DNA of 64,000 nt from Salpingoeca rosetta (taxonomy: Eukaryota; Protista; Choanoflagellata). Below the pieces are notes generated by a model. It did not search any database. It was not told the origin of the DNA and worked only from the letters and a program-made list of their open reading frames with translations. Location: the NCBI GenBank assembly GCA_033442325.1, contig JAWQFM010000013.1, positions 714,885-778,884 of the forward strand, in the 5' to 3' direction. A program made the translations under genes and the position numbers. Shown here piece after piece: positions 42,078-64,000 of the stretch; position 1 is the stretch's first letter, and the number at the start of each line of letters is the position of its first letter.

Positions 42078-43522
42078 ATGCATGCGCCACGATCATCGCG
42101 ATCGTGTTGGCGCAGCGACAAACCCCGGCAGCCCCATGGCAATGACACCAACAACAGCACCAACAAGAACAGCAAGAGGAGCAACAGGACTGCTGTCCAC
42201 CGTGCCCGAGTTGCGCCCACAGGAGTCCTTGTGATTGCTTTCCTCTGCCTGCTTTCCATGAGCTGCCAAGAAGGTGAGACGCGCGTTTCATTCCCTTGTT
42301 TGTGTTGTTTTTGACTGTCGAGTTCGGAGGTGAGGCGGTTGCTCACACGTCTCTGCCCTCACTCCGTGTGCCCTCTACCTTGCGCTTGCCCTGCAGTGTC
42401 AGCGCAGTGCACGACAACCTGTGAAGCAGGAGAGAAGTGCGTCGGTTCAGATTGCGCCGAGTGTGACCCAGGTACAGCATGAACATAAAACATACAATAT
42501 CGTGGTTTGAGGTGTTTGGGGTGACATTGCATCTTCTCGGCGCTTCCAAGTCCGCTCCCTAAAAGCAACTACACCCACCACTGCCCCCTTCTCACTATGT
42601 CGCTACACTGGGCGTGCGTGCTGGTTGCTTATTTCTGCTCCAGGCACATTTCAAGATGCAAACGACCATATGCAGACCACGTGCAAGACATGCATGAACG
42701 CCTACCAGCCAAACTCCGGTCAAGCAGGTGTGTGTGTGTGTGTGTGTGTGTGTCTGTGTGTGTGTGTGTGTGTGCTCTGCTGTGCTGTGCCACCCTGCGC
42801 TGAAAGCATGATTGCACTCACCCCATCCCCGCACACACACTCACACATCTGCAAACCGCTTCATGCTTGTAGGTTGCATTGAGTTTGCGTCATGTGGCCG
42901 AGGCAAGAAGTTTGTGACTGGCACAACCACGACACCTTCCACATGTGCAAACTGCGATGCAGGTACACCACGAGTGTCCTGTCGGTGCATGCTCTCCTTA
43001 GCTCCTTTGGTGTGCCTGATTGCCAGACATGCTGCATCACAGTCAAGAGTGCTTCTGTATGCTGTTCAGCGCCTTCACTTCACCCCCACTTCATTCAACC
43101 CATTCTCCCATTCCCCACCCACCTACCTGGTCGTTGCATGCAGGTACATATCAGGATCAAAGCGGTCATTTTGATCCAGACTGCAAACCGTGCACGGGAA
43201 ACACGTTCACAGACCAGCCGGGACAACAAGGTCTGTGTGTGGTGTGTGTCTGTGAATGTGTGAATGTGTGTGTGAATATGTGCTTTTGTGTGCGTGTGTG
43301 CGACTGTCCATCCGCACAGTTGCTCACCTCGAGTGTTCATCCAGTGACTTTGCTTCCTTACGCTTCCCGCTCCTTCTTCTTACCTCTCCGCCTCCCCTCA
43401 CCTCCCCACGTGTCCATGCACGTTGACAGGCTGCTCGGCGTGGTCGTCGTGCAATCAGGGCCAGAAGTGGGCAGCGGGTTCAGCCGATGCAGACGCAACA
43501 TGCTCAAGCTGCACTCCAGGTT

Positions 43523-43596
<74 letters not shown>

Positions 43597-44080
43597 CAGC
43601 ACCATGGTATGCTTCATTGCTTGTCTTCATCTGCCATGGATGGCATGACATGTGCCCCTTGTCTTCACCATCATCACCACCACCACAACTCCTGCCAGGC
43701 ACGTACCAAAATGAGTTCAGCCACCAGCACACATCGTGTAAGGGCTGTGGAGCTGGAACGTTCCAAAGCGGACACGGCGCCTCAGGTCAGCCACCCACAC
43801 ATGTGCACGTCTTTGCTGGTGATTTCCTCCACCTTGGCGTGTCGTTTCTTTGTGCAATCAACAAACGGAGCACCATTGTCTTCTCATTCGCGTGTGTGTA
43901 TAAGTGTCTTTCGTGCACTCACTTGCTTCCACTGCCCCTTTTCTTGCGTCAAACAGGTTGCGACGACTGGAAGACATGTGGAAAAGGCAAAAAGTGGGCG
44001 ACTGGAACGTCCACAACGGATGCAACGTGCTCGCCTTGCGGATCATGTAAGCAATAGGGATCAGGAGGCGAAGCGGCGTG

Positions 44081-44130
<50 letters not shown>

Positions 44131-47100: not shown

Positions 47101-50100
47101 CACGGCCCCGAGCATCGAGCTCATTGGCGACGCGCTGCTGGTGGTGGAGGCCGGCAGCAACTTCAGCGACATCGACCCTGGCGTGACGCTGGCTGATCTG
47201 TACTACGACAACGCCGACCTGACGCTGGTGATTGACGATGGCGGGTACGAGGCGGCGCCAACCGCCACCCCGGTCTCCTTCAACGTCACATACACGGTGA
47301 CAGACCCGTCCCGCAACACGGCCAGCGTCACGCGCACCATCACCATCATCGACACAACGCCGCCAGACCTACGTGTCAACGGGAACCTGAGCGTGACGGT
47401 TGGCGACGGCGTGACGTGGGTTGAGCCGGGCATTGCACGTGCATACGACATTGTTGACCGCGATGTGCGATCGCGTGTGGTGGCGACGACGCAGCTTGAG
47501 GAGGCCGGCGTCGTTGTTCCCACCATGTGCGCGTATTCGTCTGCGCGCGCGTTTGTGCCGCCGCTGTCGCCGCGCGTGTGGTCTTCACCTCGAATGGACG
47601 CGGTGGAGTCGAGGGCGCCAAGCGGCACCGTGTACCGCATCAACTACACGGTGGCGGACGCAGCGAGCAACGTGGCGTTTGTGGAGCGCGTGGTGCGGGT
47701 TGCAGACCCGACGCCACCCTCGCTGCAGCTGCTTGGGGATCGGGTGCAGGCGCTTGAGTACGGCCCAGATGCGGCGTTTGTTGAGGCGGACGGCGGCGCG
47801 CCGACGCCCACGACGGCGACCTGAGCGGGGATGTGTGCGTTGGCGTGAGCATTGTGACGCGCGACGCGAGCGGTGTTGTTGCGCCAGGCGACGTTGGCGG
47901 TATTGGCGAAGATGCCATCAACTACGTCCTCTCGCTTGCTCGCAACGCATCCACAACAACAGCACCACGTCCCACCACTTCCACCGCTGCCACAACTCCG
48001 ATGAACGCAGACACAAGCAACAGCAGCAACAGCAGCAGCACAGCGACAACGACTACTGCAGCTGGGACGACAGCTGCGGACATGTTTGGGCTGGACGCTG
48101 CTGTGGCGTCGGCGGAGGTGGGCACGGTGTATGTGCTGCAGTACAGCGTGCACGACCGGGCGGGCAACGCCGCTGTCGGTGTGCAGCGGGCGGTGGTGGT
48201 GGTGGACACGACGCCGCCCGAGGTGACGCTGTATGGCGCGGAGGAGGTGCACGTGCTGTATGCGACACGGTATGTGGAGGCCGGGTACAGCGCACAGGAT
48301 GTGCACGACGGCAACGTGACGTTGCAGGTGGTGGTGAGTGGGGCCGAAGCGATTGACGTGCACGTGGCGGGGACGTACGAGGTTGAGTACGCGGTGACGG
48401 ATGCGAACGGCAACACGGGTGTCGCGGTGCGGACGGTGGTGGTTGAGGCGCTGATGCGACCGGAGCGGGCGGACCAGGTGGTGGAGCTGGTGCTTGCAGG
48501 CACGGCGGAGTCCATCTTTGGCGGCGACGTGCAGCAGCTGGAGCGCGACCTGGAGGAGGCGCTGAATGTGGACTTTGTGGTGGTGTTTCTCGTCTACGAC
48601 AAAGCCCTCGGTCGCCCCACCACCGACATCAACACAGTCCCACAGCAACAACAAGGGAGGAAGAGAAGGAGAAGCAGCGGTGGCAGCAGCCGTGACAGCG
48701 ACAACAACGACAACAACTACAGCGACTCCGACAACGCTTGGATCCGTGGACGGCGTGGGCTGTTGGCGCAGCCATCGACGGTGGTTGAGTTTGGGGTTCG
48801 CAACGGCACCAGCTTGGAGTGGGTCCCTGCGGAAGGTGTTGCTGCGACCTTGACTGAAATTCGCCGTGCTGGCTCGTCGTCCTTGCCCATCAGCTCTGCG
48901 CGCTCCACGGGCGATGAAGCGGAGGCCGGGCTCCCGCTCCCCATCATCATCGGTGCTGCAGCAGGCGGCATTGTTCTCATTGTGCTCATTGCTGTCCTCG
49001 TGTCGCGTCGTCGGCGCTCGAAAGCGGCGCCAGCGTCCATATCTGGGGGCATGTTTCCCTTCCAGCACTCAGGGACGTTTCAGGAGAGCATTTACACTGT
49101 GGCTGGCGAGGGCGCGACGGTGCCCATGCAAGAAATCAATTTTGGCAAGCAGCGCGCCGCGCAGCAGAGCTACAACCACAACCACAGCCAGTACCCGCCA
49201 CCACCACCCACAAACGGCGGAGATTTGTACGGCACGCCAACGAACCTTCCTGTTGTGAACGGCATGGTGGATGGGCAGGTGTCGGAGTCAAGCCTGTACC
49301 ACGTGCCAGGCCACCCCGAGGAGGTGCTGGCAGGACGCAAGACGCTGGTGCTGCAGCAAGGGGTGAACGGCGGGTTGCCAGGCGCCGTGTCCACAGATGG
49401 CGATGGCGAATTGTACGATACACCGCGCAGCAAGCCCCGTGTGCCGGACAAAGCAGGCAGCATGCGTGGTGCCCCTGTCACTGCTGATGACTACTACGGC
49501 AGCTTGGTGCACCCTGGCCAGCGCAACCATGCCATGAGCAATGCCGGTGCTGGTGCTGGAACGGATGTGGACGGTCAGGACATGTACGATGTGCCCCGCA
49601 ACAAGCCTCGCGTGCCAGAGAAGTCAGCAAGCATCCGCAAAGCCGCGGAGGCGTTGGGTGACGACTACTACGGCAGCCTCATGCATCCTGACCAGCAAAA
49701 CGGCAGCATGAGCAATGCTAGTGTTGGTGGTGTTGGTGGTGAAATGTACGATGTGCCTCGCAGCAAGCCGCGCGTGCCTGAGAAATCAGCAAGCATTCGT
49801 GGCACGGTCACAGCTGATGACTTTTATGGCAGCCTGGTGCACCCTGGTCAGCGAAGCAGCAGCGTGAACAACGCTGATGGCAATGGTAACGGCGATGACG
49901 GTGATATGTACGACGTGCCTCGCAACAACCCACGTGTGCCCTCGCGAGCACAGGCTGCCACAGCAACAGCGTCCGTAGCAGAATCAGGTGTGGACGATCA
50001 GGAAATGTACGATGTGCCTCGATCAGCACCCCGTCTTCCGGAGAGAACAGCAACCATGACGTCACGTGCCACCATCAGCGGCGATGGGGCCGAGCAACCG

Positions 50101-51207
50101 GAAGACCAGGAGCTGTACGATACGCCGCGCGCTGCGCCGCGCCCCAAACCACGAATGGTGCTGGAACAAGCAGATGCCGGCGACGCCGTCACCGACGACC
50201 AAGAGATGTACGACGTGCCGCGGAGCAAGCCGCGTCCGCAACCACGCCCGCGCAAACCAACACTCACGCTGGACACCAACGAGTACAGCGCCCTGCCAAC
50301 AGCCCGCCCCACAAACCCCTCTGCTCCCAGCAGCACCAACGACGTCGCGCGCGGACTGCCGATGCAAGAAACGGGGGAGGAGCTGTCGTGGTCGGAGCGC
50401 TCGCGCACACTCCGCCGCCCGCCGCGAACAGACAATCGCGTGTTGGACATGTTCTCCAGCGGCGATGGTGGCGATGGCGGCGGTGGTGGTGGTGGTGACC
50501 ACGTGGACAGCAGCGCTACAGGCCGGCGCCCGACGGCCCGTAGCCGCCCGCTGACGAGCGGAGATGATGACCCCATGCGAGTGCAGGCACGCGCCCTGCC
50601 GGGTTACATTGGCGAAGCAAATCGCATGCTGGCAGAGCAGAAGCTTGCAGGATCGGCGCTGGGCACGTACTTGTGGCGGGTGAGTGCAAGCCGGGCTGGT
50701 GCAGTGCTGTCTGTTGTTGGTTCGCGACGGACTGTGCACCACATGTTCACGCAGGACGCCAGCGGCATGATTCTGATGAACGACAAGCCGCTGTCGCAGC
50801 CGTGCTACGACCTGCAGAGCGCGGTTGCGCTCTTGCACTCGCACCAGGAGCAGATGTCCTCCCAGCTGACGACCCCGCTGGCACAGGCGCCTCGCAGGGT
50901 GGTGGCAGACACACACACGTGGCTGCTGCCTGGACTCGACCGAGCTGCTGCAAAGGCGTTGCTGCACGACACGCCCGATGGCACGTTTGTGGTTACGCCG
51001 ACAGACAGCAGCCACTTTACGCTGTTCCTCTCGTACAACTTTGATGTGTCGTCACACCGCCTCTCGTACGGCAGCCACGGCTGGGTGCTGCGTCAGCAGT
51101 TTGTGCCGGCAACGACGCTTGAGGAGTGTGTTGCCGCGCTGCACGACGCGTCGTACGGCCTCCCCTGTGTGCTCACGGGGCCACCACACCAGGACGCCAT
51201 GGCTTGA
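42078..51207 (+). CDS. Giant type I receptor (copy A): TNFR/ephrin-receptor-like Cys repeats, DUF5011/HYR-like Ig repeats, SEA-like module, TM, YDxP-repeat tail, two SH2 domains; frameshifted at ~47800
   Basis: Hydrophobic leader; phase-1 exons of CxxCxxGT(Y/F)Q repeats; repeats of VDTTPP...EAG...D..D...Y.V.D..GN...RTV; TM ~48931-49002; 5x YDVP and 2x YDTP; SH2-like GTYLWRVS and WLLPGLDR..GTFVV. The long ORFs 46754-47824 and 47833-51207 are out of frame. Confidence 0.85.
46586..46705. repeat. Intronic ~38-bp tandem repeat x3
   Basis: ccccgtctcacacaccctttctcctcaccctcacatt recurs three times with minor variation. Confidence 0.75.
47278..48830 (+). repeat. Arm 1 of a long inverted duplication (partner 62441-64000)
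   Basis: Reverse complement of 62441-64000 with scattered substitutions and a 7-bp indel. Confidence 0.95.
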
Positions 51208-51232
51208 GCCGCCGTGTGTGTGTGTGTGTGTG

Positions 51233-51311
<79 letters not shown>

Positions 51312-52406
51312 GTGTGTCTGCCTGCCTGTTTGTGTGTCTTTGTGTCTGTCTGTCTGTCTGTGTGTCTGTCTGTCCGTGTTTGGCTTCATGTCGAGAGCCA
51401 CTTTTCGGTTTTGTTTGACGTTAGTTCACCATTCCATTCTGTTGCTTTATTCCATTTATCGTCTTAGAAGTCGCTACACATTGCCCTCAGTTCACGTGTT
51501 ACTTTCGACATTGCACTGCTTGCTTGTGCTCATGTCACTGTTGACACCATTGTGACATGTCATGCAACGTTGCGTTTTGTCATTGCATTCCACATCATAT
51601 TTTCATTGTTACAAGGATCGTGGGCATTGTTTGTGTTCGTTTGTGTGCATGCTGGTGCCGCTTCCGTGGCGGTTGCGTTTGGCAAAACACATGGCTCATT
51701 CCCCGTTTATCTCTTTGTTTGCGCGTGTATTGCCCCTTTCACTCGCCACTCTTCTTCTCAGTTCGTTCCTTGCCTCATTTGCGTTAGGTCTGTCGGGCAT
51801 GAATGCACTGCCTCTTGCTTGCTCTTTTTCTTTTTCTTCTTGTGTTCGGCTCTGCTTGTGTCTGTGTCCATGTTTGTGCGTGTCTGTCTGTCTGTCTGTG
51901 TGTGTGTCCGTGTGTGTATGTGTGTGTCTGTGTCTGTGTCTGTGTCTGTGTCTGTGTCTGTGTCTGTCTGTTTTTCGGTGCTTTTCTACGCGGGCGCTGC
52001 TTGCCGGCACTTGTGGAGAACATGCGAGCCATTACAACCGAACACAACCCCAACACGCATGCACTGCGCTCTTTGTCGTTGGTGTGCGAACGGTGCTACT
52101 GGCATCAGAAAGGCGCAACATGTTTGGGGGAAAGGGGGGGGCATCGTGCAACAACGCACAACACAGCGAAAGAGCAACTGGAGGTGTAGGCAATTAACAC
52201 TGAACGAGGCAAGCTCAACCACAACACTCAATCCACATCCCACCCCTAAAAACAGCGTCCATACGCGCACACAAGAACACACAACGACACCAGCATACAC
52301 ACGCGCAAACAAAGACACCAGCATACACAAGCATACACGCAAATACACAAGCATACACGCAAATACACAAGTACACAAACACGCGCACAAACACACACAC
52401 AACACA

Positions 52407-55400
52407 CTAAAACCACACATCGTCATCACCGTGATACGCAAAATCGTCGTCAGAGTCGGGGTGTTCCATGACGTCGTAGTATGCTTCCGCAGCCGTCATG
52501 CCGTGGAGCATCGTCCCATTCAGCCGGCGCTGCACCACTGATGGGGGTTTGCTATGGCAGTGGAGATCGGGCCAGGGCGACTGGCGATCATCGGCCTGCG
52601 CGGCAGATCTGCCCTGTGGCCTCGGCTTGCCGGTGCAGTCCTCCACGGTGAGAGTGTCAAAGTAGGGCATCGAGTCGACGTTGGTGAAGTGAACCTCCCT
52701 CAGGGCCAGGCTGTTCACGCCGCTCAGCCCGGCAAAGTCCTCGATGCGCCCGCCATACACCTCCAGGGACGACACCCTGCGCGTAAAGTCAACGCGCACC
52801 TCGTCGACTTCCATGTGCACGTCATCAATTCCAGTCAGGGTCAGAGACGGGCAGGTGTCAGTGACCACGAGTGAATCCGCGTCGTCCACGCGAATCGCGC
52901 CTTCGCAGTCAGTGAGCTCCACAGACACGCAGTCAATCAAGCTGTCGCCCTTCTGCAGCTGGCAGGACCGAAGGGTGACGTCAGCGATGCCTGTCACGGA
53001 TGACAGGCCCGTGATGGCGTGCTTGGTCTCGCTGGTCGACGAGAGGGTGATGTAGTCCGCGTTTGCAAGGCGTGATGCATCAAACGGGCCCGACACCTTT
53101 GCACTCACTGTGTGCACACACGCGGGGAGGGTGCAGGTGATGTCGCTGGCCTTCATGTCCAGCAACAAGACTTTCGCCCCAGCCGGCACCAAGTGCAGCA
53201 ACCCCACCACGTTGGCCGTCGCCGCGCCCGTGAGCGTAATGTTCGTCACGTGTGGCAGGCAGGACTCGAGGAAGGGCGTGGTGAGCGGGCACCCAAGTCG
53301 CAGCTCCTGCGCCGACGCCACAGCTGGCATGGCCGTCAGCTCGGGGCACCGGTCAATGATGAAGCGCGCAAGCTTGAGGCCCGAGCTGGCGGCGGTGAGC
53401 TTGGCCTTCTTGGCGCGGGGCGTGCTGCGGCGCGCTCGCCCCTTGGCAGAGAGCACCTCGAGGGAGGCCAGCTTGGGGCACGCGTCTGCGGTCAGGCGTG
53501 TCAGGTTGCAGCCGGGAACGCCAATGGCCGTCACCGCGTCGCAGTCGTGCACGTGGAGATCACGCAGGCCGTGCAGGTGCGGTATGTGCAGCGCTGCAAT
53601 GTTGGGGCAGCTGCCAATATGCAGCTCGTGCAAGCGGGACGCCTCACAGGTGAACTCGGTGAAGCCGCAGGCGTGGCAGACGACAGCGGATGCGTCCTGT
53701 TCGGCGTGAATGTGCACGTTACGCAACGCACGACACACGGACAGCTCCAGCCGACCCACGTCTCCCGTGGCGTGGACACCGAAGTCGATGAGGCCGGTGC
53801 AGTTTGAGATGCAGATGGTGTCGAAGCTGTGCAGCTGCTGCAGTTGCACGGACGCGAGCGAGGCGCATGTGTAGATGTCCAGGCTCAGCAGTGCCATGTC
53901 GGCGAAAGCAATCTCCTTCAGTGCCTCGCATTCGCTGATGCCGACCTTCCGCGCGCTCTGGGCATTGGGGAGCTCCACAGACGAAAGGAGCTCGCAATTC
54001 CTCACGGTGAGGGTATCCAGCTTCTTGCTGCCGAGCACAACCCTGCCCATGCGATTGCAGGAACGGACATTCACGCACGTGGCGTTTTGCGCGTGAATCA
54101 CAGTCACCTGATGAACGAAGGAGAGGTCAAGGCGGTCGCCGGTGAAGCTGAACGCTTCAAAGGCGGCAACATCGCAGGCCCTGATATCCAGGTGCGGTAC
54201 ATCCTTCAGCGGGGCGAGGCTTTTCAGGCCAACATGGTCAAGCGATACTCTCTGCGCATGCTGCAGTGGAGTCAGGTCGGGCAGGGATGTGATGAACTCG
54301 AAGCTGACGTTGGGAACACCTGCCAGAGCGCTGATGTCAGAGATGGTGCGCCGGTCGCTGGCGTAGCCCCTGATGGACACCTCATTCACGTGGCGAAACG
54401 AGCCCTTGATTTCCGCCTGCGCCTGTGGGGAGGTCCACTTGAATGTGGTGACGTTGTCCAGGTCAAGGTGGTCGATGGGCTCCGAGGAAGTGATGCAGAG
54501 GTTGTGTGCGTTGCGCATGCTGAAGCGCTCCAGCTTGCCAAACGGCGCGTGGGGTTGGGAGCCAGAAGACCCAATACCCAGATCAAGCTTGCCGCACCCG
54601 GGGTCTCCCAGGGCTTGCAGAAGAAAGGAGAGGAAGTGGACGTCGCTCGCTTGATCGCACATGCACTTGGCATGTACGGTGATCTCCGCGGGGCGCAGGG
54701 GTGACGGGCGCGGTGCAGTGATGGCGCGACTTTTGGCACCGCTGCTGGTGTCGCTGCTGGGTGGGGGATCAAGAGCCATGAGCCTTGGGTTGTTGACCCA
54801 TGCTTTGATGTCGACCACATCCGAGAAACCGACGCGCCCAAAGAGCGCAAACTTGCGTCGAAACTCTGACTCCTGCGCCATGCGTGAAAACATATGGTGA
54901 GAACATCCCCACCAGACACCCAGTCTCGAGTATGCCAAGAAGCGGCCAGCCTCCCACGCTTCCGCAGCCTCCGCAGCCTCCTTGCTGGTGGTGGTGGTGG
55001 GAGTGATAATGGTGGGGAAGCCATCGGCGTCCATGCTGATTGTGAGGTGCGACGGAACTGCCGGTCGGATCCAGGAGCAAATCAGCCGGTGGGCAAACTT
55101 TCTGCCAAACCACCACTTTGGCATGGCCCACGGCAACTCATCGTACAGGAAGCGGCACGTGAACATGAGGCGCATCAGCGCTATGACGTCGGGGCTCATG
55201 CCATCAGGGGGGAAGGACTCTTTAGTGAGGTGACGCGCGATCAGTGACCACGCATCAATGCTGAGCGCGTGCACGCCTTGCGCATCATCCCCTGCCGTTT
55301 TGCTGCTGTCCGAGCTGCTGGATCCCTTGTCCGCGATCGCCTTTTTCTTGGCCGCCTTGCGGCCTCCTTTGTTGCCGCGACGGCTGCGGCGGGGCGGCAT
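52407..55400 (-). CDS. Intronless F-box-like/LRR protein (~1000 aa)
   Basis: Probable start MPPRRSRR (basic, NLS-like); F-box-like LSIDAWSLIARHL...RLMFTCRFLY; many Cys-containing LRRs (LxIxxCxxL, DISAL, DLTPL). Confidence 0.7.
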   Translation of the reverse strand: MPPRRSRRGNKGGRKAAKKKAIADKGSSSSDSSKTAGDDAQGVHALSIDAWSLIARHLTKESFPPDGMSPDVIALMRLMFTCRFLYDELPWAMPKWWFGRKFAHRLICSWIRPAVPSHLTISMDADGFPTIITPTTTTSKEAAEAAEAWEAGRFLAYSRLGVWWGCSHHMFSRMAQESEFRRKFALFGRVGFSDVVDIKAWVNNPRLMALDPPPSSDTSSGAKSRAITAPRPSPLRPAEITVHAKCMCDQASDVHFLSFLLQALGDPGCGKLDLGIGSSGSQPHAPFGKLERFSMRNAHNLCITSSEPIDHLDLDNVTTFKWTSPQAQAEIKGSFRHVNEVSIRGYASDRRTISDISALAGVPNVSFEFITSLPDLTPLQHAQRVSLDHVGLKSLAPLKDVPHLDIRACDVAAFEAFSFTGDRLDLSFVHQVTVIHAQNATCVNVRSCNRMGRVVLGSKKLDTLTVRNCELLSSVELPNAQSARKVGISECEALKEIAFADMALLSLDIYTCASLASVQLQQLHSFDTICISNCTGLIDFGVHATGDVGRLELSVCRALRNVHIHAEQDASAVVCHACGFTEFTCEASRLHELHIGSCPNIAALHIPHLHGLRDLHVHDCDAVTAIGVPGCNLTRLTADACPKLASLEVLSAKGRARRSTPRAKKAKLTAASSGLKLARFIIDRCPELTAMPAVASAQELRLGCPLTTPFLESCLPHVTNITLTGAATANVVGLLHLVPAGAKVLLLDMKASDITCTLPACVHTVSAKVSGPFDASRLANADYITLSSTSETKHAITGLSSVTGIADVTLRSCQLQKGDSLIDCVSVELTDCEGAIRVDDADSLVVTDTCPSLTLTGIDDVHMEVDEVRVDFTRRVSSLEVYGGRIEDFAGLSGVNSLALREVHFTNVDSMPYFDTLTVEDCTGKPRPQGRSAAQADDRQSPWPDLHCHSKPPSVVQRRLNGTMLHGMTAAEAYYDVMEHPDSDDDFAYHGDDDVWF

Positions 55401-55602
55401 GATCGCTTTCGCTTCACACCCTGTCCGTCTGCTGGCTGGTGTCGGCTTGTTGGTCTTGTCTTGTCGTCTTGTTGGTCTTGTCTTGTCTTGGTTTTGGGGT
55501 TTTCCGCGCCCTAAATAAACGTGCATCGAATCACGCAGGCTGCACACCACCAGCAAGCAGGAGACACGTGCCTGCAAACACACCTGAACCCACGACGGCA
55601 GC

Positions 55603-57342
55603 ATGAGTGAACCGTGTGAGAAGCGAGCCAAGACAAGCGAAGAAGCAGTGGAGCTGGTGGAGGAGCTGGTGGAGGAGCTGGTGGAGGAGGACGAGAGCGT
55701 GCAGTATGTGCCGCATCCACTGGGGATTGTGTCATCGATGATGGCGAGTTTGGGTAGTGGGACGGTGGTGGAACGATCCTCACTGGGCAGCCTGTTTGCC
55801 GTGCTGCCGGACGAGGTGGTGTTGGAGGTGCTGTCGCAACTGGACGCGCCGTCCCTCGCTGCCTTTGCCTGCTGCAGCCGCCTCTGCTACGTCTTCGCCA
55901 GCACGGACGAGCTCTGGAAGCAGCTCGTGCTCCAGGCGGTGCAGGCGGACAACATGCACGGCAAATGGGAGTACAGCGGCACCTGGAAGCGGACCTACGC
56001 CCAGCTGGCCACCACCCGCCGGTCCAACCACACCCAAGACGGGACGTCATCAACACAGACCACAGAACCCCCAGCAAGCAGTAACACGGTGGCATCAGGA
56101 GCGCCAGTGGCATCAATGTCATCGGCAACAACGGCAACGACGGCGGCCACTGCAACAACTGAAACGACTGCAACGCAACAACACCAACTATTCGGCCTGC
56201 AGTTTGGCATGGTGCCATCAGACACCCTCTTTGAGGCATGGCTGTCCGTGACGGCGAAGATCCAGCCTCACTGGCTCGTACACGACAACATACCGCGACG
56301 CGACGCCGCCTCCCTCAGCGCCCGCGAGTTTGACGAACAGTATGAGCAGCGGAGGCAGCCCGTGGTGATCCGAGGGGCCGCTGCAGAGTGGCCGGCCTTT
56401 CGAAGGTGGACGCGGGTTAGCATCGCGTCGCAGTTCCGTCGCCCCACAAGCAGCGACGCTGGCCATGGTGATCATGGCAGCAGCAGCGCCGGCGAGAGCG
56501 AGGAGCAGCTGTTTGATGCGTTTGATGAGTACTCTGGGTCCCACCGCATGACAATGGGCCAGTACATGGCGTACGCGCGGCAGCAGCAGGACGAGCGACC
56601 CCTGTATGTGTTTGAGCCGCGGTACATTGAGGAGAACAGCACGCTCGCACACGCATACACCACGCCGCCACACTTCCAGCATGACCTGATGTCCCACCTC
56701 GGCACGGCGCGGCCAGACTGGCGGTGGCTGCTGGCGGGGCCAGCGCGCACAGGCACCAACTTCCACGTCGACCCGAACCACACCTCCGCCTGGAACACGG
56801 TCGTGTATGGGCGCAAGAAGTGGGTGATGTTTCCGCCGCACGTTGCGCCGCCTGGCGTATGCGTGTGCCCCGAGACGGGTCGCGTGGAGCAGCCAGACTC
56901 TGTCATGGCGTGGTTCCTGCAGTACTACGACGACATCCACGCGGACCCGCGCCTGCGCCGGCACGTGCGCGAGTGCGTGTGCGGCCCGGGCGACACCGTG
57001 TTCATACCCGACGGCTGGTGGCACCTCGTCCTCAACACGGAGGAGACGGTTGCCATCACGCACAACTACATTGGGCCGGCCAACTTGCACCGCTGCCTCT
57101 CCTTCCTCGACACGGGTGTGCCCCGCCATATGACCCATGCGGGGCCCTCCGACCTTGCGAGCCGGTTCCGCGCAGCCTTGCAGCAGCATGCGCCCGACGT
57201 GCTTGCACGTGCAGAGCAGCGACTGCAGCAACAGCGGTGTGGGAACGGGTCTGGTGATGCTGTGGAGACGGCGTCCTGTCTCGCAGACGGCCCCAAGCCT
57301 GCAAGTTCCGTGCACGCGTTCAGCTTTAACTTTGCCACGTAA
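55603..57342 (+). CDS. Intronless F-box + JmjC (JMJD6-family) 2OG oxygenase
   Basis: F-box LPDEVVLEVLSQLDAPSL...CCSR..Y......LWK; JmjC RPDWRWLLAGPARTGTNFHVDPNHTSAWN...GRKKW and FIPDGWWHLVLN.E.TVAITHNY (HxD...H intact). Confidence 0.92.
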   Translation: MSEPCEKRAKTSEEAVELVEELVEELVEEDESVQYVPHPLGIVSSMMASLGSGTVVERSSLGSLFAVLPDEVVLEVLSQLDAPSLAAFACCSRLCYVFASTDELWKQLVLQAVQADNMHGKWEYSGTWKRTYAQLATTRRSNHTQDGTSSTQTTEPPASSNTVASGAPVASMSSATTATTAATATTETTATQQHQLFGLQFGMVPSDTLFEAWLSVTAKIQPHWLVHDNIPRRDAASLSAREFDEQYEQRRQPVVIRGAAAEWPAFRRWTRVSIASQFRRPTSSDAGHGDHGSSSAGESEEQLFDAFDEYSGSHRMTMGQYMAYARQQQDERPLYVFEPRYIEENSTLAHAYTTPPHFQHDLMSHLGTARPDWRWLLAGPARTGTNFHVDPNHTSAWNTVVYGRKKWVMFPPHVAPPGVCVCPETGRVEQPDSVMAWFLQYYDDIHADPRLRRHVRECVCGPGDTVFIPDGWWHLVLNTEETVAITHNYIGPANLHRCLSFLDTGVPRHMTHAGPSDLASRFRAALQQHAPDVLARAEQRLQQQRCGNGSGDAVETASCLADGPKPASSVHAFSFNFAT

Positions 57343-57771
57343 TGTGTGCGTGTGCGTGTGTGTGTGTGTGTCTGTATGTATGTCTGTGTGTATGTGTGTG
57401 CTTCATTTGATTCGCGTTCTCTTCTGCATGTGTGTGGCACCGTGCCCATGTGCATCCCCTTACGTTGCCCCCGCCCCCGCCCCCAGTGTCAGCTTCAGGT
57501 GCAACAGCACACGCTGTGTATTCGTTGTTGCGGTAGATAAACATCAAATGCATGATGATGGCCATGATGAACAACACAGCACGATGTTGGCTTGTCAGAG
57601 GCATAACACAAAACATGGTGATGATAGAACAAAATCGTGTCAACAAATGCAAGGACAACGGATGAATCATCCGTGATGACCATCATGATGATGATGATAA
57701 TGATGATGATGATGATGAGGGCGGGCTTCATCGCGCTCCCGCCACGCGCCCGTCACGCTTCCATGACTCAA

Positions 57772-59509
57772 TTACTCCTGGGTTGCACCCGGGGCGTAGA
57801 ACCACACCTCGTTGTGGCGGTTGAACTAGATACAGCGTTGCAATGTCGTGTGTGACAACATATGTAAGACAAGACGAGGTGAGACGAGGTGGTATTGGTA
57901 AGGTAAGAGGACAGTGAACACACGGCAAGCAAGAAGAATGCGAGATATGATGGGCGTGAGTGAACAAGAGTACAGATCCAATGCAATCAAAGCGACACGC
58001 GTGCAAGGCTGCCCACCAGCTGGTAGGGGCTGTCGTAGCCGGCAGTGTAGTACACCGTTGAGTTGAAGGCGATGTTGTCCTTCGTCAGCGCCTGTTGCCA
58101 GTGTTGTGTGCGCGTGTGCGTGTGCGTGTGTGAGAGGTGAGTGACACACACACGAGCACGAGAGAGTGTGTGATGTTGGTGGAATGTTGACGAGTATTGA
58201 TAGGTAAGCAAGAGAACACAATGACCGATCGACACAGCCAGACCGGGTTTGAGTGCTCGTGCGTGCCAGGCATACAGAGCACAACCCCATGGCTGCTGCG
58301 ATTCTCGTCATTACTGTGCTCTACCTGGGCGAGGGCTTCGGCGTGACCGATGTCGTCCTTCTCCTTGGCAAATCCAGGAAAGCTGGTGACATAGGTGGTG
58401 TGCGCGGGCTCAGACTCAATGTACACGTCCTTCGATGCCTGCATGGCAGCGAGTAGGTGAAGGGACAGCCAAGGACGGAAGAGGGGAAGAGAAAGGCGTT
58501 TCGTGAGCATGGAACATGTGCGATTACATTTTGTGTACGGCATGAGGCAAAGACATGCTCGTGTTGAGTTCCATCTCGGTGCTTGGGGTGTTGGGATGTG
58601 CATTCGGGGTGGTGGACACGCGGTGGCATGCGACACGCAAGCTGCATGTGTGTGTTGTGTCGTGTTGAATGTTAACTCACGGGCTTGGGTGGGTTTGGCT
58701 GGAAGGCGAACGGCACCATGAAGCTGACGGTGAACGTGGACTTGCAGTATGGGCCAGAGCCAGGGTACACTTGAACCGTGACGGGTGCGGTCATGGGAAT
58801 GTGCTTCACATCAACGTTTGCACCAGAGATGTAGCTGAACAGGCGCTGGAAACCTGGATGCATGTTGTGTGAGTGAGTATGTGTGTGAGTATGTGCGTGA
58901 GTATGTGTGAGTGAGCAAGTGAGTGCGCATGCATGTGAGTGTGTGTATGTGTGTGTGTGCATGTGTGTCATTGGGGGATAAAGTGGGTTGTTGTTGCTGC
59001 TCCTGAAGTCGTGCAAGAACCGACAAACCGTCACGCACGCACGACCACGTAACACCTCACCAATGGCGGTGGCGGTGGTGTAGTTTGCGCTCTCAACTTG
59101 GGTGCGTGCCCACTGGGACGCGCTGTAGTGGCGGACCTCATACGTGTCCGTGCGGTTGACGACCGTGAAACGTGGGCAATCTGAGGGATGGTGGAAAGCA
59201 AGCACGGGGGTCAAGTACACAGACATGTGTACACAAAGCTGAATGAATGAGCCGCGTGTGCAGGTTCATTATACACACCGAAGTGGGAACATGCGACACA
59301 GAATGAATTGGGGTCAGTCAACGCGGCACCAGCGAACACCTTCTCCAGCAACCGCGCTCCAAACTCTGCATGTCCTTACCCAGGCTGCGGCAGAAGGCGG
59401 GCTCATCGTTGCGTGAGAGCCGTGCTTGCAGAGGAGCAGCGTTGGCCACAGTCAGGGCCACAGCCGCAACGAGCACAGTTGCAAACACACATTTCCCCAA
59501 GGCGAGCAT
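57772..59509 (-). CDS. Secreted SOUL/heme-binding protein (6 exons)
   Basis: Signal peptide; DCPRF, YEVRHY, GFQRLFSYISGAN, IPMTAPV, TVSFMVP, AGYDSPYQL|FNRHNEVWF...*. Confidence 0.92.
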
Positions 59510-60378
59510 CTTGGCAGCGTGGAGGAGGTAAAAAGGAAACGTCGCTGAGAGAGGGGCTGAGACGTGACAGGTTGTAGCTTGTAAGTTGTTGGCTTGGAAC
59601 ACGGTGCGAGAGGTAAATGAACGTTAAAGCCGGGGCTGCACTGCCTGTGCGCACCCAATGTGAGCCAGGCAGCGTGTCCCCTCGTCATCTCACGCAGCAG
59701 AGCACACTCCCGTCATCATCATCGCTGCTCGCCTGCTTTTTTTGTTCGCATGGGTGCAACATTTGGGCTTCACGAACAGTCCTTCCTCCACACCCGCCTG
59801 TCAATTTTGACAGGTGATTGTTTGTGTTTGTGTTTGTGTTTGTGGTTGGGGGTGGCTTGGTTGTGTCTGTGTGTGGTTGCGACATGAGCATCAGCACAGC
59901 ACCAGCACACGCGCATGTCACACCCCACCACCTCAAGCACTGCGGGCCAGTTGTAGGAAGTGTATGTAGTCAGCAGCAGCTCTCACACCCAACGAAAAGT
60001 CAAGCAAGCACACAAACGCATAGGACGGTAACACACGGTTCGCGCGTTGCTCGGGCAGTAACATGACAGGCACATCATGTGGCGGAAGCTGCACATAACA
60101 GAAGAGGTGCAAAGGAATGAGCAGGAGCGAGAAACACTAAGGGCCGGGATGGCAGCAGCACAGAAATGTAACCAAGACGGGGCAAGCGCGCCACAAATCG
60201 CGGAACATGGACTGGGCGTAAGGAAAATGGAGCCAAAGGCGCGTGGCACACATAACTGAAAAAGCCAAACACGGCAGTTAAGTAAAGTGATGGAACGCAA
60301 CATAACGAACAGTATGTATCCTCAAACGATTCACACAACACAACACAACACAGCACAGCACAACACAGCGTGTGCGTG

Positions 60379-63300
60379 TTATGCCTCGGAAGCCGTGACC
60401 TCGGAAAGACCTGGCACGGCGGGCTCTTTCAGTAGCACGGTGGAGAGCTCCGTGCTGCGCCCGAGCAGCGCAACAACATCGTCGAGGGTCGTGCATGTCG
60501 TGGACAGCGGCTTCATGTTCATGACAATTGCACCGCTCGACGCGTCTCGCGTGAACACGTGGTGCTCCACAATGTGGCGCCCGTGAACCGAAAGCACGGC
60601 ACCCGGGGCGTTCCTGCTCAGCCGCCACAGGTACGTGCCTTGCTCGCGCCCACTCAGCAACTCCTCCACCTCCTTGCGGTTCATAAACCCAACAAATCCA
60701 GCCTGTGCACCGGCATTCAGGTATGCTGGACTCTGCGCCATCTCGCTGGCCATGTCCTCGGCCCGCAGCGTCGATCGCCTGATCTCGGCCGCTGAGCTAC
60801 CGCTGCTGCGTCTCACGGTGTCGGGCTTGCTCGTGGCTGTGGGCGCGCGCGTGCGACGCTCCTTGGTCGATGCAGACGCCTTCCCGACACCATGAGCACC
60901 GTCCGTGCTTGGCCTGCTCTGCCGCGCACTTGCAGAGCGGGTGGTTGTCGCCGACTTTGCCGATGATGGCGGTGCAAGCGTTGATGGCGACGAAGATGCA
61001 GTTGAACCGGAAGCAGGCGCCACATGCGGCACGGAGTACAGGTTGGCACCGGCTTCCTGCCCGGTGGGTTCGCCTTTCAGGTTCTCGTACACCTGCGTGC
61101 CTGCGCTTGACGGCGCTTCCGTCGGCATTGAAGAAACGGTTGCAGCACGCGGCGGCTGCGGCAGTCTCCGCACGCTTCCCGATCCAGCACTGCCACCCGT
61201 TGCCGTCGTAGCGGTGGTGCTGGAAGCGGTGGCGGCGGTGTGGCCCAAGGGCTTGCTCTGCATGACGGGGCTGTCCACGTCTTCGTACAGGCTTGGTGCA
61301 AAGTCCACGGCCCGCTGCTGCGCTGCCGCCGACGCAGCTGTTCCAGATGTCGCGCGCGCTTTCGGAACGTCGTACATGTTGTCATCTTCCACGTCCGCAG
61401 TCGTAGCAGCAGGTGTCGCCTGTGTCGTGGTGGTCGCACCAGCCTTGACGCGTGGCTCACGACGTGGCACGTCGTACATGTCATCAACCTCTGACGCCAC
61501 TGCGGTTGCTGGCGGCGGGGCACTGGCCACGGGTTTGCCCGTTGCCTCCACGTCCTCATACAACGCCTCGCCCGCTGGTGGGTGCTTCGGCTTCACAGCT
61601 TCCTTCTTGGGCACGTCGTACATGTTGTCTGTGTCGTCCGTCACTGCAGGCGCAACACGCGGCGGAAGCACAGGCGCCGGTGACGGGGGCACAGGTGCAG
61701 TCTCGCTCACATCCTCATACAGGTTGAGCTCGGGCACATGGGCCGTGGTGGCCGCGCCTGCCCGCAGCGTTTCCGTGACATCCACGAGACCGGCCGGTGG
61801 CGCTGTCTTTGGATTGGGGTCCGTGCTGCTTTCGTTGGCAGAGCACAGGTCGCTGTACAGCTCCACACCGCTGTGCCGCGATGCCAGCAGCCTGAGTTCA
61901 CCCGTGTCCGCTGCGAACCGCACCTCTGACACGGCAGGCCCCGTGTCGTCGTCGCTCCCGTAGCCATCGCCGCCAACATCGTCATCGCTGCTGCTGCTGC
62001 TGCTGTTGTAGGGGTCGTCGTGGTCTGACTCGTCAGAGAAGTTGGGCTGGCCAACGTGCCCGTCCGAGGACAGCTGGTTGCGAGCGCCGTTCATGCGAGA
62101 GGCGGCGGCGGCGGCGCCCGCTGTTGTGCTCATCACTGTGCCAGCCGTCATTTCCATTGCATCGCCGTTGCGGAACTCAAACGGGCCAGGTGCCATGCTC
62201 AGCGTGTTCTTGCCCGAGAACGAGTCCTTGGGCTCGCTGCTCCTCTTGAACAGGTCAGGCCGGCGCTTGTACACAACAACGGCAGCGACCAGCACCACCA
62301 GCACTAACAGCACGCCAACGACGGCGCCTGCAACAGCACCACCATCGCTTCCACCGCCGCGCTTGGCAGCGCTGGCAACAGACGTGATTCGAGTCGCTGC
62401 CAGGGTTTCGAGCCCTTCAAACCGAGCAAGCAGGATGTCGGCAGGCACCCACTCCAAGCTGGTGCCGTTGCGAACCCCAAACTCGACCACCGTCGATGGC
62501 TGCGCCAACAGCCCACGCCGTCCACGGATCCCAGCGTTGTCGTTGTGGCTGTAGTTGTTGTCGTTGTTGTCGCTGTCACGGCTGCTGCCACCGCTGCTTC
62601 TCCTTCTCTTCCTCCCTTGTTGTTGCTGTGGGACTGTGTTGATGTCGGTGGTGGGGCGACCGAGGGCTTTGTCGTAGACGAGAAACACCACCACAAAGTC
62701 CACATTCAGCGCCTCCTCCAGGTCGCGCTCCAGCTGCTGCACGTCGCCGCCAAAGATGGACTCCGCCGTGCCTGCAAGCACCAGCTCCACCACCTGGTCC
62801 GCCCGCTCCGGTCGCATCAGCGCCTCAACCACCACCGTCCGCACCGCGACACCCGTATTGCCGTTCGCATCCGTCACCGCGTACTCAATCTCGTACGTCC
62901 CCGCCACGTGCACGTCAATCGCATCGGCCCCACTCACCACCACCTGCGACGTCACGTTGCCGTCGTGCACATCCTGTGCGCTGTACCCGGCCTCCACATA
63001 CCGTGTCGCATACGGCACGTGCACCTCCTCCGCGCCATACAGCGTCACCTCGGGCGGCGTCGTGTCCACCACCACCACCGCCCGCTGCACACCAACAGCG
63101 GCGTTGCCCGCCCGGTCGTGCACGCTGTACTGCAGCACATACACCGTGCCCACCTCCGCCGACGCCACAGCAGCGTCCAGCCCAAACATATCCGCAGCTG
63201 TCGTCCCAGCTGCAGTGGTCGTTGTCGCTGTGCTGCTGCTGCTGTTGCTGTTGCTTGTGTCTGCGTTCATCGTAGTTGTGGAAGCGGTGGAAGTGGTGGG

Positions 63301-64000
63301 AGGTGGTGCTGTTGTTGTGGATGCGTTGCGAGCAAGCGAGAGGACGTAGGTGATGGCAGCTTCGCCAATACTGCGAACATCGCCTGGCGCAACAACGCCG
63401 CTCGCGTCGCGCGTCACAATGCTCACGCCAACGCACACGTCCCCGCTCAGGTCGCCGTCGTGCGTGTCGGCAGAGACTGCGCCGCCGTCCGCCTCAACAA
63501 ACGCCGCATCTGGGCCGTACTCCAGCGCCTGCACCCGGTCCCCAAGCAGCTGCAGCGAGGGTGGCGTCGGGTCTGCAACCTGCACCACGCGCTCCACAAA
63601 CGCCACGTTGCTCGCTGCGTCCGCCACCGTGTAGTTGATGCGGTACACGGTGCCGCTCGGCGCCCTCGACTCCACCGCGTCCATTCGAGGTGAAGACCAC
63701 ACGCGCGGCGACAGCGGCGGCACAAACGCGCGCGCAGACGAGTACGCACACATGGTGGGAACAACAACGCCGGCCTCCTCAAGCTGCGTCGTCGCCACCA
63801 CACGCGATCGCACATCGCGGTCAACAATGTCGTATGCACGTGCAATGCCCGGCTCAACCCACGTCACGCCGTCGCCAACCGTCACGCTCAGGTTCCCGTT
63901 GACACGCAGGTCTGGCGGCGTTGTGTCGATGATGGTGATGGTGCGCGTGACGCTGGCCGTGTTGCGGGACGGGTCTGTCACCGTGTATGTGACGTTGAAG
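60379..64000 (-). CDS. Paralogous type I receptor (copy B; 5' part outside window): DUF5011/HYR-like repeats, SEA-like module, TM, YEDV/YDVP tail, one SH2
   Basis: 1200-aa ORF; TM AVAGAVVGVLLVLVVLVAAVVVY-KRR; 3x YEDV, 3x YDVP, YENL; SH2 FVGFMNRKEVEELL...GTYLWRLS. Confidence 0.88.
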   Translation of the reverse strand, partial: FNVTYTVTDPSRNTASVTRTITIIDTTPPDLRVNGNLSVTVGDGVTWVEPGIARAYDIVDRDVRSRVVATTQLEEAGVVVPTMCAYSSARAFVPPLSPRVWSSPRMDAVESRAPSGTVYRINYTVADAASNVAFVERVVQVADPTPPSLQLLGDRVQALEYGPDAAFVEADGGAVSADTHDGDLSGDVCVGVSIVTRDASGVVAPGDVRSIGEAAITYVLSLARNASTTTAPPPTTSTASTTTMNADTSNSNSSSSTATTTTAAGTTAADMFGLDAAVASAEVGTVYVLQYSVHDRAGNAAVGVQRAVVVVDTTPPEVTLYGAEEVHVPYATRYVEAGYSAQDVHDGNVTSQVVVSGADAIDVHVAGTYEIEYAVTDANGNTGVAVRTVVVEALMRPERADQVVELVLAGTAESIFGGDVQQLERDLEEALNVDFVVVFLVYDKALGRPTTDINTVPQQQQGRKRRRSSGGSSRDSDNNDNNYSHNDNAGIRGRRGLLAQPSTVVEFGVRNGTSLEWVPADILLARFEGLETLAATRITSVASAAKRGGGSDGGAVAGAVVGVLLVLVVLVAAVVVYKRRPDLFKRSSEPKDSFSGKNTLSMAPGPFEFRNGDAMEMTAGTVMSTTAGAAAAASRMNGARNQLSSDGHVGQPNFSDESDHDDPYNSSSSSSDDDVGGDGYGSDDDTGPAVSEVRFAADTGELRLLASRHSGVELYSDLCSANESSTDPNPKTAPPAGLVDVTETLRAGAATTAHVPELNLYEDVSETAPVPPSPAPVLPPRVAPAVTDDTDNMYDVPKKEAVKPKHPPAGEALYEDVEATGKPVASAPPPATAVASEVDDMYDVPRREPRVKAGATTTTQATPAATTADVEDDNMYDVPKARATSGTAASAAAQQRAVDFAPSLYEDVDSPVMQSKPLGHTAATASSTTATTATGGSAGSGSVRRLPQPPRAATVSSMPTEAPSSAGTQVYENLKGEPTGQEAGANLYSVPHVAPASGSTASSSPSTLAPPSSAKSATTTRSASARQSRPSTDGAHGVGKASASTKERRTRAPTATSKPDTVRRSSGSSAAEIRRSTLRAEDMASEMAQSPAYLNAGAQAGFVGFMNRKEVEELLSGREQGTYLWRLSRNAPGAVLSVHGRHIVEHHVFTRDASSGAIVMNMKPLSTTCTTLDDVVALLGRSTELSTVLLKEPAVPGLSEVTASEA
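62441..64000 (-). repeat. Arm 2 of the inverted duplication (partner 47278-48830; may extend beyond window)
   Basis: See arm 1. Confidence 0.95.

What the first reader, a model, noticed from the sequence alone, without database searches (positions are those of the whole stretch)
47278..64000. Paired receptors: inverted paralogs with near-identical ectodomains but different TM segments and phosphotyrosine tails
Seen: 47278-48830 is the reverse complement of 62441-64000, with few substitutions and one 7-bp indel. Identity stops abruptly at LEWVPA, just before the membrane. Beyond it the juxtamembrane, TM and tails differ: copy A has YDVP/YDTP/YYGSL repeats and two SH2; copy B has YEDV/YDVP/YENL motifs, an RRLPQPP SH3 ligand and one SH2. 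The SH2 domains are clearly homologous yet well diverged (GTYLWR, GAVLSV, HH.FT.DAS, MN.KPLS), so the duplication is old while the ectodomain was homogenised recently. Known: gene conversion of ligand-binding regions between receptors with different signalling tails is the hallmark of animal paired receptors (e.g. Siglec-5/14, Siglec-11/16). Inference: a unicellular paired-receptor system giving two outputs for one ligand. Recombination between the arms could also invert the intervening ~13.6 kb and swap tails between the two 5' ends.
Basis: partly seen in the sequence, partly recalled or inferred. Interest (0 to 1): 0.85.

Follow-up and report, generated by a model that had tools for sequence, protein, structure and literature searches.

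The report
Receptor gene pair homogenised by gene conversion
Two convergent receptor genes of the choanoflagellate Salpingoeca rosetta share a 3.3-kb nearly identical core that was copied between them, while their outermost domains and their signalling tails stay different; this is a mosaic gene family that swaps pieces, not a proven "one ligand, two outputs" pair.

Summary
The inverted repeat is real and runs past the window end: 45323-48833 matches 62438-65923 at 96%. Both arms lie inside type I receptor genes of Salpingoeca rosetta. Each gene encodes TNFR-like Cys repeats, HYR/DUF5011 Ig-like repeats, a TM segment, a Tyr-motif tail and an SH2 domain.

Gene conversion is well supported.
- dS is 0.058 in the shared exons and introns differ by 3%. 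dS is about 1.5 in the SH2 and TM regions.
- Trees switch from (A,C26a) in the 5' part to (A,B) in the tract, both with 100% support.

- The N-terminal ~440 residues of A and B are only 30-55% identical, so the ectodomains are not near-identical throughout.
- At least six more copies elsewhere share the same core. They carry short tails without SH2, so this is a mosaic family, not a strict pair.
- Both tails are of one signalling class, and A's second SH2 is degenerate.

The 7-bp gap frameshifts copy A in the reference and splits its annotation. One RNA contig with A-private letters carries the 7 bp, so A is probably intact.

Tail A (PTSG_05573) was already published as a YxxP docking protein whose pYDVP peptides bind a Crk SH2. 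The new part is the concerted evolution.

The parts
42078..51207 (+). Gene A, whole span. The reference annotation splits it into a 1031-aa ectodomain model (P0004, ending at the frameshift stop 47824) and PTSG_05573 (1066 aa).
   Evidence: gene models on GL832967.1, which is 100% identical to the window; exon map.
42078..45486 (+). A 5' part: signal region and TNFR/ephrin-receptor-like Cys-rich exons. It is 92-100% identical to the C26a paralog and only 30-55% identical (protein) to B, except exon 44234-44497.
   Evidence: tree (A,C26a) 100/100.
45500..48831 (+). A arm of the A-B conversion tract: HYR/DUF5011 Ig-like repeats, the stalk and three introns. 5' breakpoint between 45476 and 45577; 3' breakpoint at 48831-48834.
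   Evidence: tree (A,B) 100/100.
45487..45714 (+). Intron (GT..AG), spliced out in RNA contigs; 1.3% different from B.
   Evidence: joints in X1 and X2.
46080..46328 (+). Intron, inferred from RNA contig ends, zero RNA depth and the restored reading frame; 4.9% different from B.
46482..46738 (+). Intron (GT..AG), spliced out in RNA contigs; 3.2% different from B.
47799..47800 (+). Site where reference copy A lacks AGTCTCT, which frameshifts it. It lies at a junction between a B-like patch and a C26a-like patch. One RNA contig carries the 7 bp together with A-private letters.
48832..49005 (+). A juxtamembrane segment and TM (approximately 48943-49005), followed by the RRRR stop-transfer. Unrelated to B at the DNA level.
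49006..50330 (+). A cytoplasmic Tyr-motif region (11 YxxP, of which 5 MYDVPR and 2 LYDTPR; 3 (Y/F)YGSL).
   Evidence: PMC5043372.
50590..50847 (+). A first SH2 (approximate limits).
50917..51186 (+). A second, degenerate SH2-like domain (FVVT in place of FLVR; approximate limits).
52407..59509 (.). Three unrelated genes between the arms: an LRR protein (-), a 579-aa ORF (+) and a SOUL-domain gene (-).
60379..64000 (-). Gene B, the part inside the window. Its last-exon ORF is uninterrupted from 64737 down to 60382 (extended coordinates). The gene continues to about 69468 beyond the window (2190-aa model).
62438..64000 (-). B arm of the tract (continues to 65923 beyond the window).
62272..62343 (-). 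B TM segment (approximate). The first 130 nt past the boundary are 89-91% identical to the C15 paralog.
61030..61857 (-). B Tyr-motif region (3 YDVP, 3 YEDV, YENL, YSVP; RRLPQPP).
60460..60708 (-). B SH2 (single; keeps the alphaA2 Arg, betaB5 Arg and betaD4 His).

Best explanation
A and B are two old paralogs within a Salpingoeca rosetta family of type I receptors. The architecture is Cys-rich TNFR-like modules, HYR/DUF5011 Ig-like repeats, a TM segment, a Tyr-motif tail and a C-terminal SH2. Their tails diverged long ago.

A ~3.3-kb internal stretch that encodes the Ig-like repeats and the stalk, introns included, was later copied between them by ectopic gene conversion. A was probably the recipient, because the tract clusters with the B/C15 type. 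The same core is exchanged in patches with at least four short-tailed paralogs on other contigs. Each gene is therefore a mosaic of N-terminal type, shared core and tail type.

Inferred function: after ligand binding or clustering, a cytoplasmic tyrosine kinase phosphorylates the YDVP-type sites. These sites dock Crk-type SH2 adaptors. The receptor's own SH2 may bind phosphorylated tails in cis or in trans.

The frameshift in reference copy A is probably an assembly error or a strain-private lesion.
For: - Repeat and its extension.
- Divergence: dS 0.058, dN 0.022 and introns 3.1% in the tract, against dS about 1.5-1.6 in SH2 and TM.
- Tails are collinear, with aligned MYDVPR motifs, and the SH2 domains are reciprocal best hits in the genome.
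- Topology switches from (A,C26a) to (A,B), both 100/100. Breakpoints are mapped by informative sites.
- Family members and their tails.
- Older SH2-tailed relatives with diverged ectodomains lie on C12, C30, C3 and C23.
- Spliced RNA contigs cover the A exons, and one bridges the boundary into tail A with 0 mismatches.
- A k-mer combination joining the 7 bp to A-type letters is absent from the reference but present in an RNA contig that carries A-private letters.
- pYDVP peptides of PTSG_05573 bind M. brevicollis crka1 SH2 by ITC (PMC5043372).
- B's SH2 keeps the pTyr-binding residues.
Against: - Read evidence comes from short-read contigs, which are themselves mosaics in this family. No long read was seen.
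- B's junction and B's expression were not checked with reads.
- Divergence inside the tract is 3-6%, so the event is not very recent, or several events overlap.
- The direction of conversion rests on one unrooted tree.
- The reference frameshift, if real, makes A a transcribed pseudogene.
- No ligand, kinase or in vivo phosphorylation is known.
Confidence: 0.75

Rival explanations
1. True paired receptors in the animal sense. A and B bind the same ligand through the homogenised ectodomain and give two different outputs, and selection maintains the homogenisation.
For: The shared core covers about 930 residues at 96-99% identity. The tails differ in motif content (YEDV, YENL and PxxP in B only; YYGSL and a second SH2-like domain in A only). 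The genes are linked and tail A is transcribed.
Against: The N-terminal ~440 aa differ (30-55% identity). Both tails share YDVP sites and one SH2 type, and no opposing-signal dichotomy or charged TM residue is seen. The core is shared with four or more further genes. Introns are homogenised as well, so no selection on the protein is needed to explain the identity.
Confidence: 0.15
2. Copy A is a transcribed pseudogene. The 7-bp deletion is real, only the downstream part could be translated, and B is the single working gene.
For: The reference has the deletion and its annotation is split there. All other paralogs keep the frame. No contig of the three other runs laid (X2, X10, X5) covers the site, and no public run was listed for the junction words.
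Against: An RNA contig with A-private letters T47832 and T47874 carries the 7 bp, and that letter combination is absent from the reference. The silence of the DNA contigs is explained by majority-paralog paths. dN/dS of about 0.37 in the tract and an intact 1140-codon downstream frame argue against decay.
Confidence: 0.25
3. A recent inverted segmental duplication, followed by non-homologous replacement of the tails and 5' ends (exon shuffling), rather than gene conversion between old paralogs.
For: Inverted arms lie 13.6 kb apart on one contig. Other family members have an intron in the TM region where tails could be swapped.
Against: The A/B boundary lies inside a continuous exon in both genes. 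Beyond it the two proteins remain collinear and homologous at dS about 1.5. Each 5' end has a closer relative on another contig.
Confidence: 0.08
4. An assembly artefact: one arm is a mis-placed or chimeric copy of a repeat family.
For: This is a multi-copy family. The reference is an older assembly. The 7-bp gap sits exactly at a mosaic junction.
Against: The arms differ at 153 alignment columns and have distinct flanks. Contigs from four runs in four studies bridge 48833 into tail A, one with 548 nt of core and 0 mismatches.
Confidence: 0.04

Closest known systems
Animal paired receptors homogenised by gene conversion (Siglec-11/16, Siglec-5/14, CEACAM1/3; PMC5701461, PMC5112662)
   Same: Linked paralogs whose extracellular coding DNA, introns included, is kept nearly identical by gene conversion, with an abrupt loss of identity just before the membrane and different cytoplasmic parts.
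   Different: - There is no inhibitory/activating dichotomy (no ITIM versus charged TM plus ITAM adaptor).
- The membrane-distal domains are not shared between A and B.
- Many genes share the core.
- The tails carry their own SH2.
- The organism is unicellular and no ligand is known.
PTSG_05573 and M. brevicollis A9V449 / A9VAL3: transmembrane YxxP proteins with C-terminal SH2-like domains (Shigeno-Nakazawa et al. 2016, PMC5043372)
   Same: PTSG_05573 is the C-terminal model of copy A itself. It has the same p130Cas-like YxxP array, and its pYDVP peptides bind a choanoflagellate Crk SH2 in vitro. A9V449 has the same architecture of Cys-rich module, DUF5011, TM, YxxP and SH2.
   Different: The paper used the truncated model. 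It did not report copy B, the upstream half of A, the paralog family or any gene conversion.
p130Cas/BCAR1 substrate domain
   Same: Repeated YDxP/YxxP sites that dock Crk and Nck SH2 domains after Src-family phosphorylation.
   Different: Cas is cytosolic, with SH3 and FAT-like domains. Here the array is the tail of a transmembrane receptor that ends in SH2 domains. Homology to Cas is not established (not significant in PMC5043372).
Concerted evolution of surface-protein multigene families by ectopic recombination (for example var, VSG, KIR/LILR)
   Same: Mosaic paralogs on several chromosomes, patchwise identity and segment-dependent phylogenies.
   Different: There is no evidence here for antigenic variation, mono-allelic expression or telomeric location. 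The exchanged unit is an internal core, not the variable part.

Membership tests
Paired receptors (animal immune type) | Two linked genes with highly similar whole extracellular (ligand-binding) regions | tested here: not met
   The core of about 930 residues is 96-99% identical, but the N-terminal ~440 aa are only 30-55% identical. Whole-ectodomain similarity holds instead for A/C26a and B/C15 on different contigs.
Paired receptors (animal immune type) | Opposing signalling: ITIM-type tail versus short tail with a charged TM residue recruiting an ITAM adaptor | tested here: not met
   Both tails are long, with YDVP sites plus SH2. Both TM segments are uncharged. Opposite function cannot be excluded without experiments.
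Paired receptors (animal immune type) | Similarity maintained by gene conversion that ends before the TM | tested here: met
   dS 0.058 against about 1.5, homogenised introns, topology switch at 100/100, and the boundary at 48831-48834.
Paired receptors (animal immune type) | Co-expression in the same cells and a shared ligand | not testable with these tools
   Only transcription of A was seen, in RNA contigs. B expression, cell type and ligand are unknown.
SH2 domain (PF00017), phosphotyrosine-binding | Pfam match above the gathering score, plus alphaA2 Arg, betaB5 (FLVR) Arg and betaD4 His | tested here: met
   B scores 29.6 bits when the domain is scanned alone. A's first SH2 scores 25.2 bits in the whole protein against a cut-off of 21, and 19.3 bits when scanned alone. 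The alignment to Grb2 SH2 shows the three residues. A's second SH2-like domain fails: 14.1 bits and Arg replaced by Thr.
Crk-SH2 docking (Cas-like YxxP array) | Multiple YxxP/YDVP sites in a cytoplasmic region; phosphopeptides bind a Crk SH2 | tested here: met
   There are 11 YxxP in tail A and 4 in tail B. Binding of the EM-pYDVP-RS and DM-pYDVP-RN peptides to M. brevicollis crka1 SH2 is published (PMC5043372). Phosphorylation in vivo is untested.
HYR / DUF5011 (Bact_surface_Ig-like) receptor ectodomain | Repeated PF16403/PF02494 matches N-terminal to a single TM | tested here: met
   PF16403 E-values of 1e-15 to 1e-25 in A and B; HYR is sub-threshold. TNFR_c6 and Ephrin_rec_like are found in the N-terminal models.

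The most novel reading that the evidence does not exclude
The conserved Ig-like core acts as a recombination cassette. It lets S. rosetta reassort alternative N-terminal Cys-rich (ligand-binding) modules with alternative cytoplasmic outputs. The present genome shows a 2x2 set: type-2 N-terminus with an SH2 tail (A) or a short tail (C26a), and type-1 N-terminus with an SH2 tail (B) or short tails (C15, C26b). The inverted A/B arms would swap tails by inversion. Exchange may still be going on in laboratory lineages, because the RNA variant at 47697-47799 is B-like where the reference A is not. This would be a pre-animal counterpart of paired and combinatorial immune-type receptors.
Probability: 0.2. 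Interest if true: 0.75.

Novelty: new variant of a known kind. Interest (0 to 1): 0.5.

Why it matters
[quoted passage not shown] Three things follow from this locus.

- A receptor family with a biochemically supported Crk-docking tail evolves by domain-level concerted evolution. That process was previously described mainly for animal immune receptors.
- The published PTSG_05573 model is probably a truncated half of a ~2,100-residue receptor with a large Cys-rich and Ig-like ectodomain. This changes how the protein should be studied.
- The family offers natural chimeras: the same core with different N-termini and tails. They can be used to dissect receptor-to-pTyr signalling in a genetically tractable unicellular organism.

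It is not evidence for a one-ligand, two-output switch.

Tried and rejected
- Purifying selection as the cause of identity: rejected, because introns are homogenised and dS is low.
- An independent assembly check: the GenBank record (GL832967.1) is 100% identical to the window over 23.4 kb. It is the same assembly and gives no independent support.
- A search for runs holding the deletion junction: the first attempt was too short. The second used only 2 sampled words and listed none. This is uninformative, because DNA contigs follow majority-paralog letters.
- Loose ends at 48717 and 50087 as structural variants: rejected. Both lead to one unrelated locus on C6 (about 1.97 Mb), which I take to be short shared or low-complexity words.
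- The loose end at 47709: it translates to SSPLLRVNGR, the peptide encoded there by the C26 paralogs. It is a graph branch, not a variant.
- DNA-level search for other copies of tails A and B: none, apart from 136 nt of B's TM region in C15.
- The search of earlier findings: nothing on record near this place.
- Literature search for gene conversion in S. rosetta: nothing relevant.
Full report
**Organism and locus**

The window is G000:C13:714885-778884 of a 55.4-Mb genome. Tail A is 100% identical to Salpingoeca rosetta PTSG_05573. The GenBank scaffold GL832967.1 is identical to window 37831-61207 over 23,377 bp, so the window comes from that same reference assembly.

**The observation**

The repeat finder confirms two adjoining inverted arms, 47278-47799/63479-64000 (98%) and 47800-48833/62438-63471 (97%), separated by a 7-bp indel.

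I fetched sequence beyond the window end. The repeat really spans 45323-48833 against 62438-65923 (3.5 kb, 96%; 153 differing columns). A separate island lies at 44231-44498 against 66572-66840 (94%).

Identity is 100% over 48523-48722. It collapses to about 40% within a few nucleotides of 48831, directly after the codons for LEWVPA.

**The two genes**

- Both arms lie in multi-exon genes that converge on each other.
- Gene A (+) runs from about 42078 to 51207. Gene B (-) runs from about 69468 (outside the window) to 60379.
- Pfam finds Bact_surface_Ig-like/DUF5011 (E 1e-15 to 1e-25), weak HYR, and SH2 in both tails. The N-terminal models carry TNFR_c6 and Ephrin_rec_like repeats.
- RNA-derived contigs from two runs splice out 45487-45714 and 46482-46738 (GT..AG) and have zero depth in three introns. 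With the inferred intron 46080-46328, the exons give an open frame.
- One RNA contig covers 48285-51205 with no mismatch. It joins the shared core, including three A-specific letters, to tail A. Contigs of three further runs bridge the boundary by 39 nt.
- So tail A is transcribed and the join is not an assembly chimera.

**Tails**

Tail A has 11 YxxP (5 MYDVPR, 2 LYDTPR) and three (Y/F)YGSL. Tail B has 3 YDVP, 3 YEDV, YENL, YSVP and RRLPQPP.
- Both TM segments are uncharged.
- The tails align collinearly: juxtamembrane, TM, basic stop-transfer, MYDVPR-type repeats, SH2.
- The SH2 domains are 44-48% identical and are each other's best match in the whole genome.
- B's SH2 aligns to Grb2 SH2 and keeps the alphaA2 Arg, the FLVR Arg and the betaD4 His.
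- A's second SH2 is only an SH2-like remnant. Pfam gives E 0.052 and 14 bits, and FVVT replaces FLVR. It is homologous to the second SH2 of a paralog on C12 (E 2e-6).

**Gene conversion**

- Over 924 codons of the shared exons, dS = 0.058 and dN = 0.022. The three introns differ by 3.1%.
- In the SH2 block pS = 0.65 (dS about 1.5). In the juxtamembrane and TM region dS is about 1.6.
- That is a roughly 25-fold contrast inside continuous open reading frames.
- Because the introns are homogenised too, selection on the protein cannot explain the identity.

**A family, not a pair**

The core has further copies at C26:~299 kb (C26a), C26:~448 kb (C26b), C15:~925 kb, C9:~1.491 and 1.497 Mb, and C3:~1.05 Mb, at 73-97% identity.

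- Their annotated or inferred tails are short (about 150-200 aa), carry Tyr motifs and a shared HAW..YD motif, and have no SH2.
- A's 5' part (42394-45476) is 92-100% identical to C26a. It is essentially unalignable with B, except for one exon. At the protein level the first ~440 residues of A and B are 30-55% identical.
- B's 5' part matches C26b and C15 (87-97%). B's first 130 nt beyond the boundary match C15 at about 90%.
- Maximum-likelihood trees give (A,C26a) and (B,C26b)+C15 with 100/100 support for 43501-45300. They give (A,B) with 100/100 for 45500-47700, with C15 as the next relative.
- Informative sites place the 5' switch between 45476 and 45577, at the exon/intron border, and the 3' switch at 48831-48834. 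Short C26a-like patches lie inside the tract.
- The genome also holds older SH2-tailed receptors with diverged Ig-like ectodomains on C12, C30 and C3, plus a Cys-rich (TNFR-like) one on C23. A metagenomic protein has the same architecture.

The simplest history is this. A and B descend from an old duplication of an SH2-tailed receptor. Their cores were later overwritten by ectopic conversion within a wider family that exchanges this core in patches. The present genes form a 2x2 set of N-terminal type against tail type.

**The 7-bp gap**

- Reference A lacks AGTCTCT in a coding exon, and every other paralog keeps the frame.
- The reference annotation consequently splits A into a 1031-aa model and PTSG_05573.
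- The gap lies exactly at a junction between a B-like patch and a C26a-like patch.
- One RNA contig (depth about 8) carries the 7 bp followed by A-type letters at 47806 and 47808. It also carries A-private letters at 47832 and 47874.
- That letter combination occurs nowhere in the reference. It therefore cannot be a graph chimera of reference sequences.
- DNA-run contigs do not cover the site. They follow majority-paralog letters throughout this family, so their silence says little.
- I estimate about 70-75% that A is in frame in living cells. The reference then holds either an assembly error or a strain-private lesion.

**Function**

Shigeno-Nakazawa et al. (PMC5043372) found PTSG_05573 as a transmembrane protein with 10 YxxP motifs and SH2-like domains. 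They showed by ITC that two of its pYDVP peptides bind the M. brevicollis crka1 SH2. They did not describe copy B, the missing N-terminal half or any conversion.

My mechanism beyond that result is inference:
- clustering-induced tyrosine phosphorylation of the tail;
- docking of a Crk-type adaptor;
- binding of the receptor's own SH2 to phosphorylated tails.

**Comparison with paired receptors**

Gene conversion that stops before the membrane is shared with Siglec-11/16 and CEACAM pairs (PMC5701461, PMC5112662). The defining features of an identical ligand-binding region and opposing signalling are not met for A/B. If any pairs resemble the animal case, they are A/C26a and B/C15, which share a whole ectodomain and differ in having long SH2 tails versus short tails.

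**Limits**

- Read evidence is from short-read contigs only.
- B's join and B's expression were not examined.
- Inversion between the arms was not testable.
- The direction and number of conversion events are tentative.

**Verdict**

This is a real, well-supported case of concerted evolution in a choanoflagellate receptor family. The paired-receptor function is unproven and, for A/B, unlikely as stated.

Noticed in passing
window 42078-47824 and 47833-51207: The reference annotation splits one receptor gene into two models at the 7-bp frameshift. The published analysis of PTSG_05573 (PMC5043372) used the truncated C-terminal model, without its signal region, Cys-rich modules and most Ig-like repeats.
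   Followed up: partly
window 48101-48300 (B side 63100-63300); L027/L028 (C9:1.49 Mb): A patch of about 260 nt encoding VTLYGAEEVHVPYATRYVEAGYSAQDVHDGNVT is 92-99% identical in all family members. That includes the C9 copies, whose flanks are only 56-80% identical. It looks like a conversion hot patch that reaches distant members.
   Followed up: no
window 46754-48400 and family-wide: The Ig-like repeats match mainly bacterial and metagenomic DUF5011/HYR surface proteins: 28-33% identity over about 80% of the query, with E-values from 1e-236 (best) to about 1e-130 among the top rows. This could reflect ancient transfer or simply a shared fold.
   Followed up: no
window 47697-47755: The RNA contig of run X1 is B-like at three sites where reference A is not. 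This is either a strain difference, possibly a further conversion in a laboratory lineage, or a graph switch within a 43-nt stretch that A and B share.
   Followed up: partly
L026 (C15:920501-930500), gene-sense position ~5226: The C15 paralog has an in-frame stop (AST*QGN) in the last large exon as read here. The annotated model PTSG_12379 is N-terminally partial. It may be a small intron or a broken copy.
   Followed up: no
L027 (C9:1486001-1496000): A run of N (reads as X in translation) interrupts the C9a copy inside the core. This is a masked or unresolved stretch in a repeat-family member.
   Followed up: no
window 43500-44250, 45598-45694, 46079-46164, 51210-51400 and the same introns in the paralogs: (CA)n/(GT)n microsatellites sit in the introns and flanks of all family copies, including right after the TM-coding exon of the short-tailed genes. 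They are possible recombination-prone sites.
   Followed up: no
L043 (C12:1071769-1075350), L044 (C30:153310-158649), L046 (C3:2496592-2500197), L045 (C23): Four further single-exon-tail receptors carry Tyr motifs and one or two C-terminal SH2 domains. They form a wider SH2-tailed receptor class in S. rosetta. The C30 member shares the YDVP/YEDV motif mix of copy B.
   Followed up: partly
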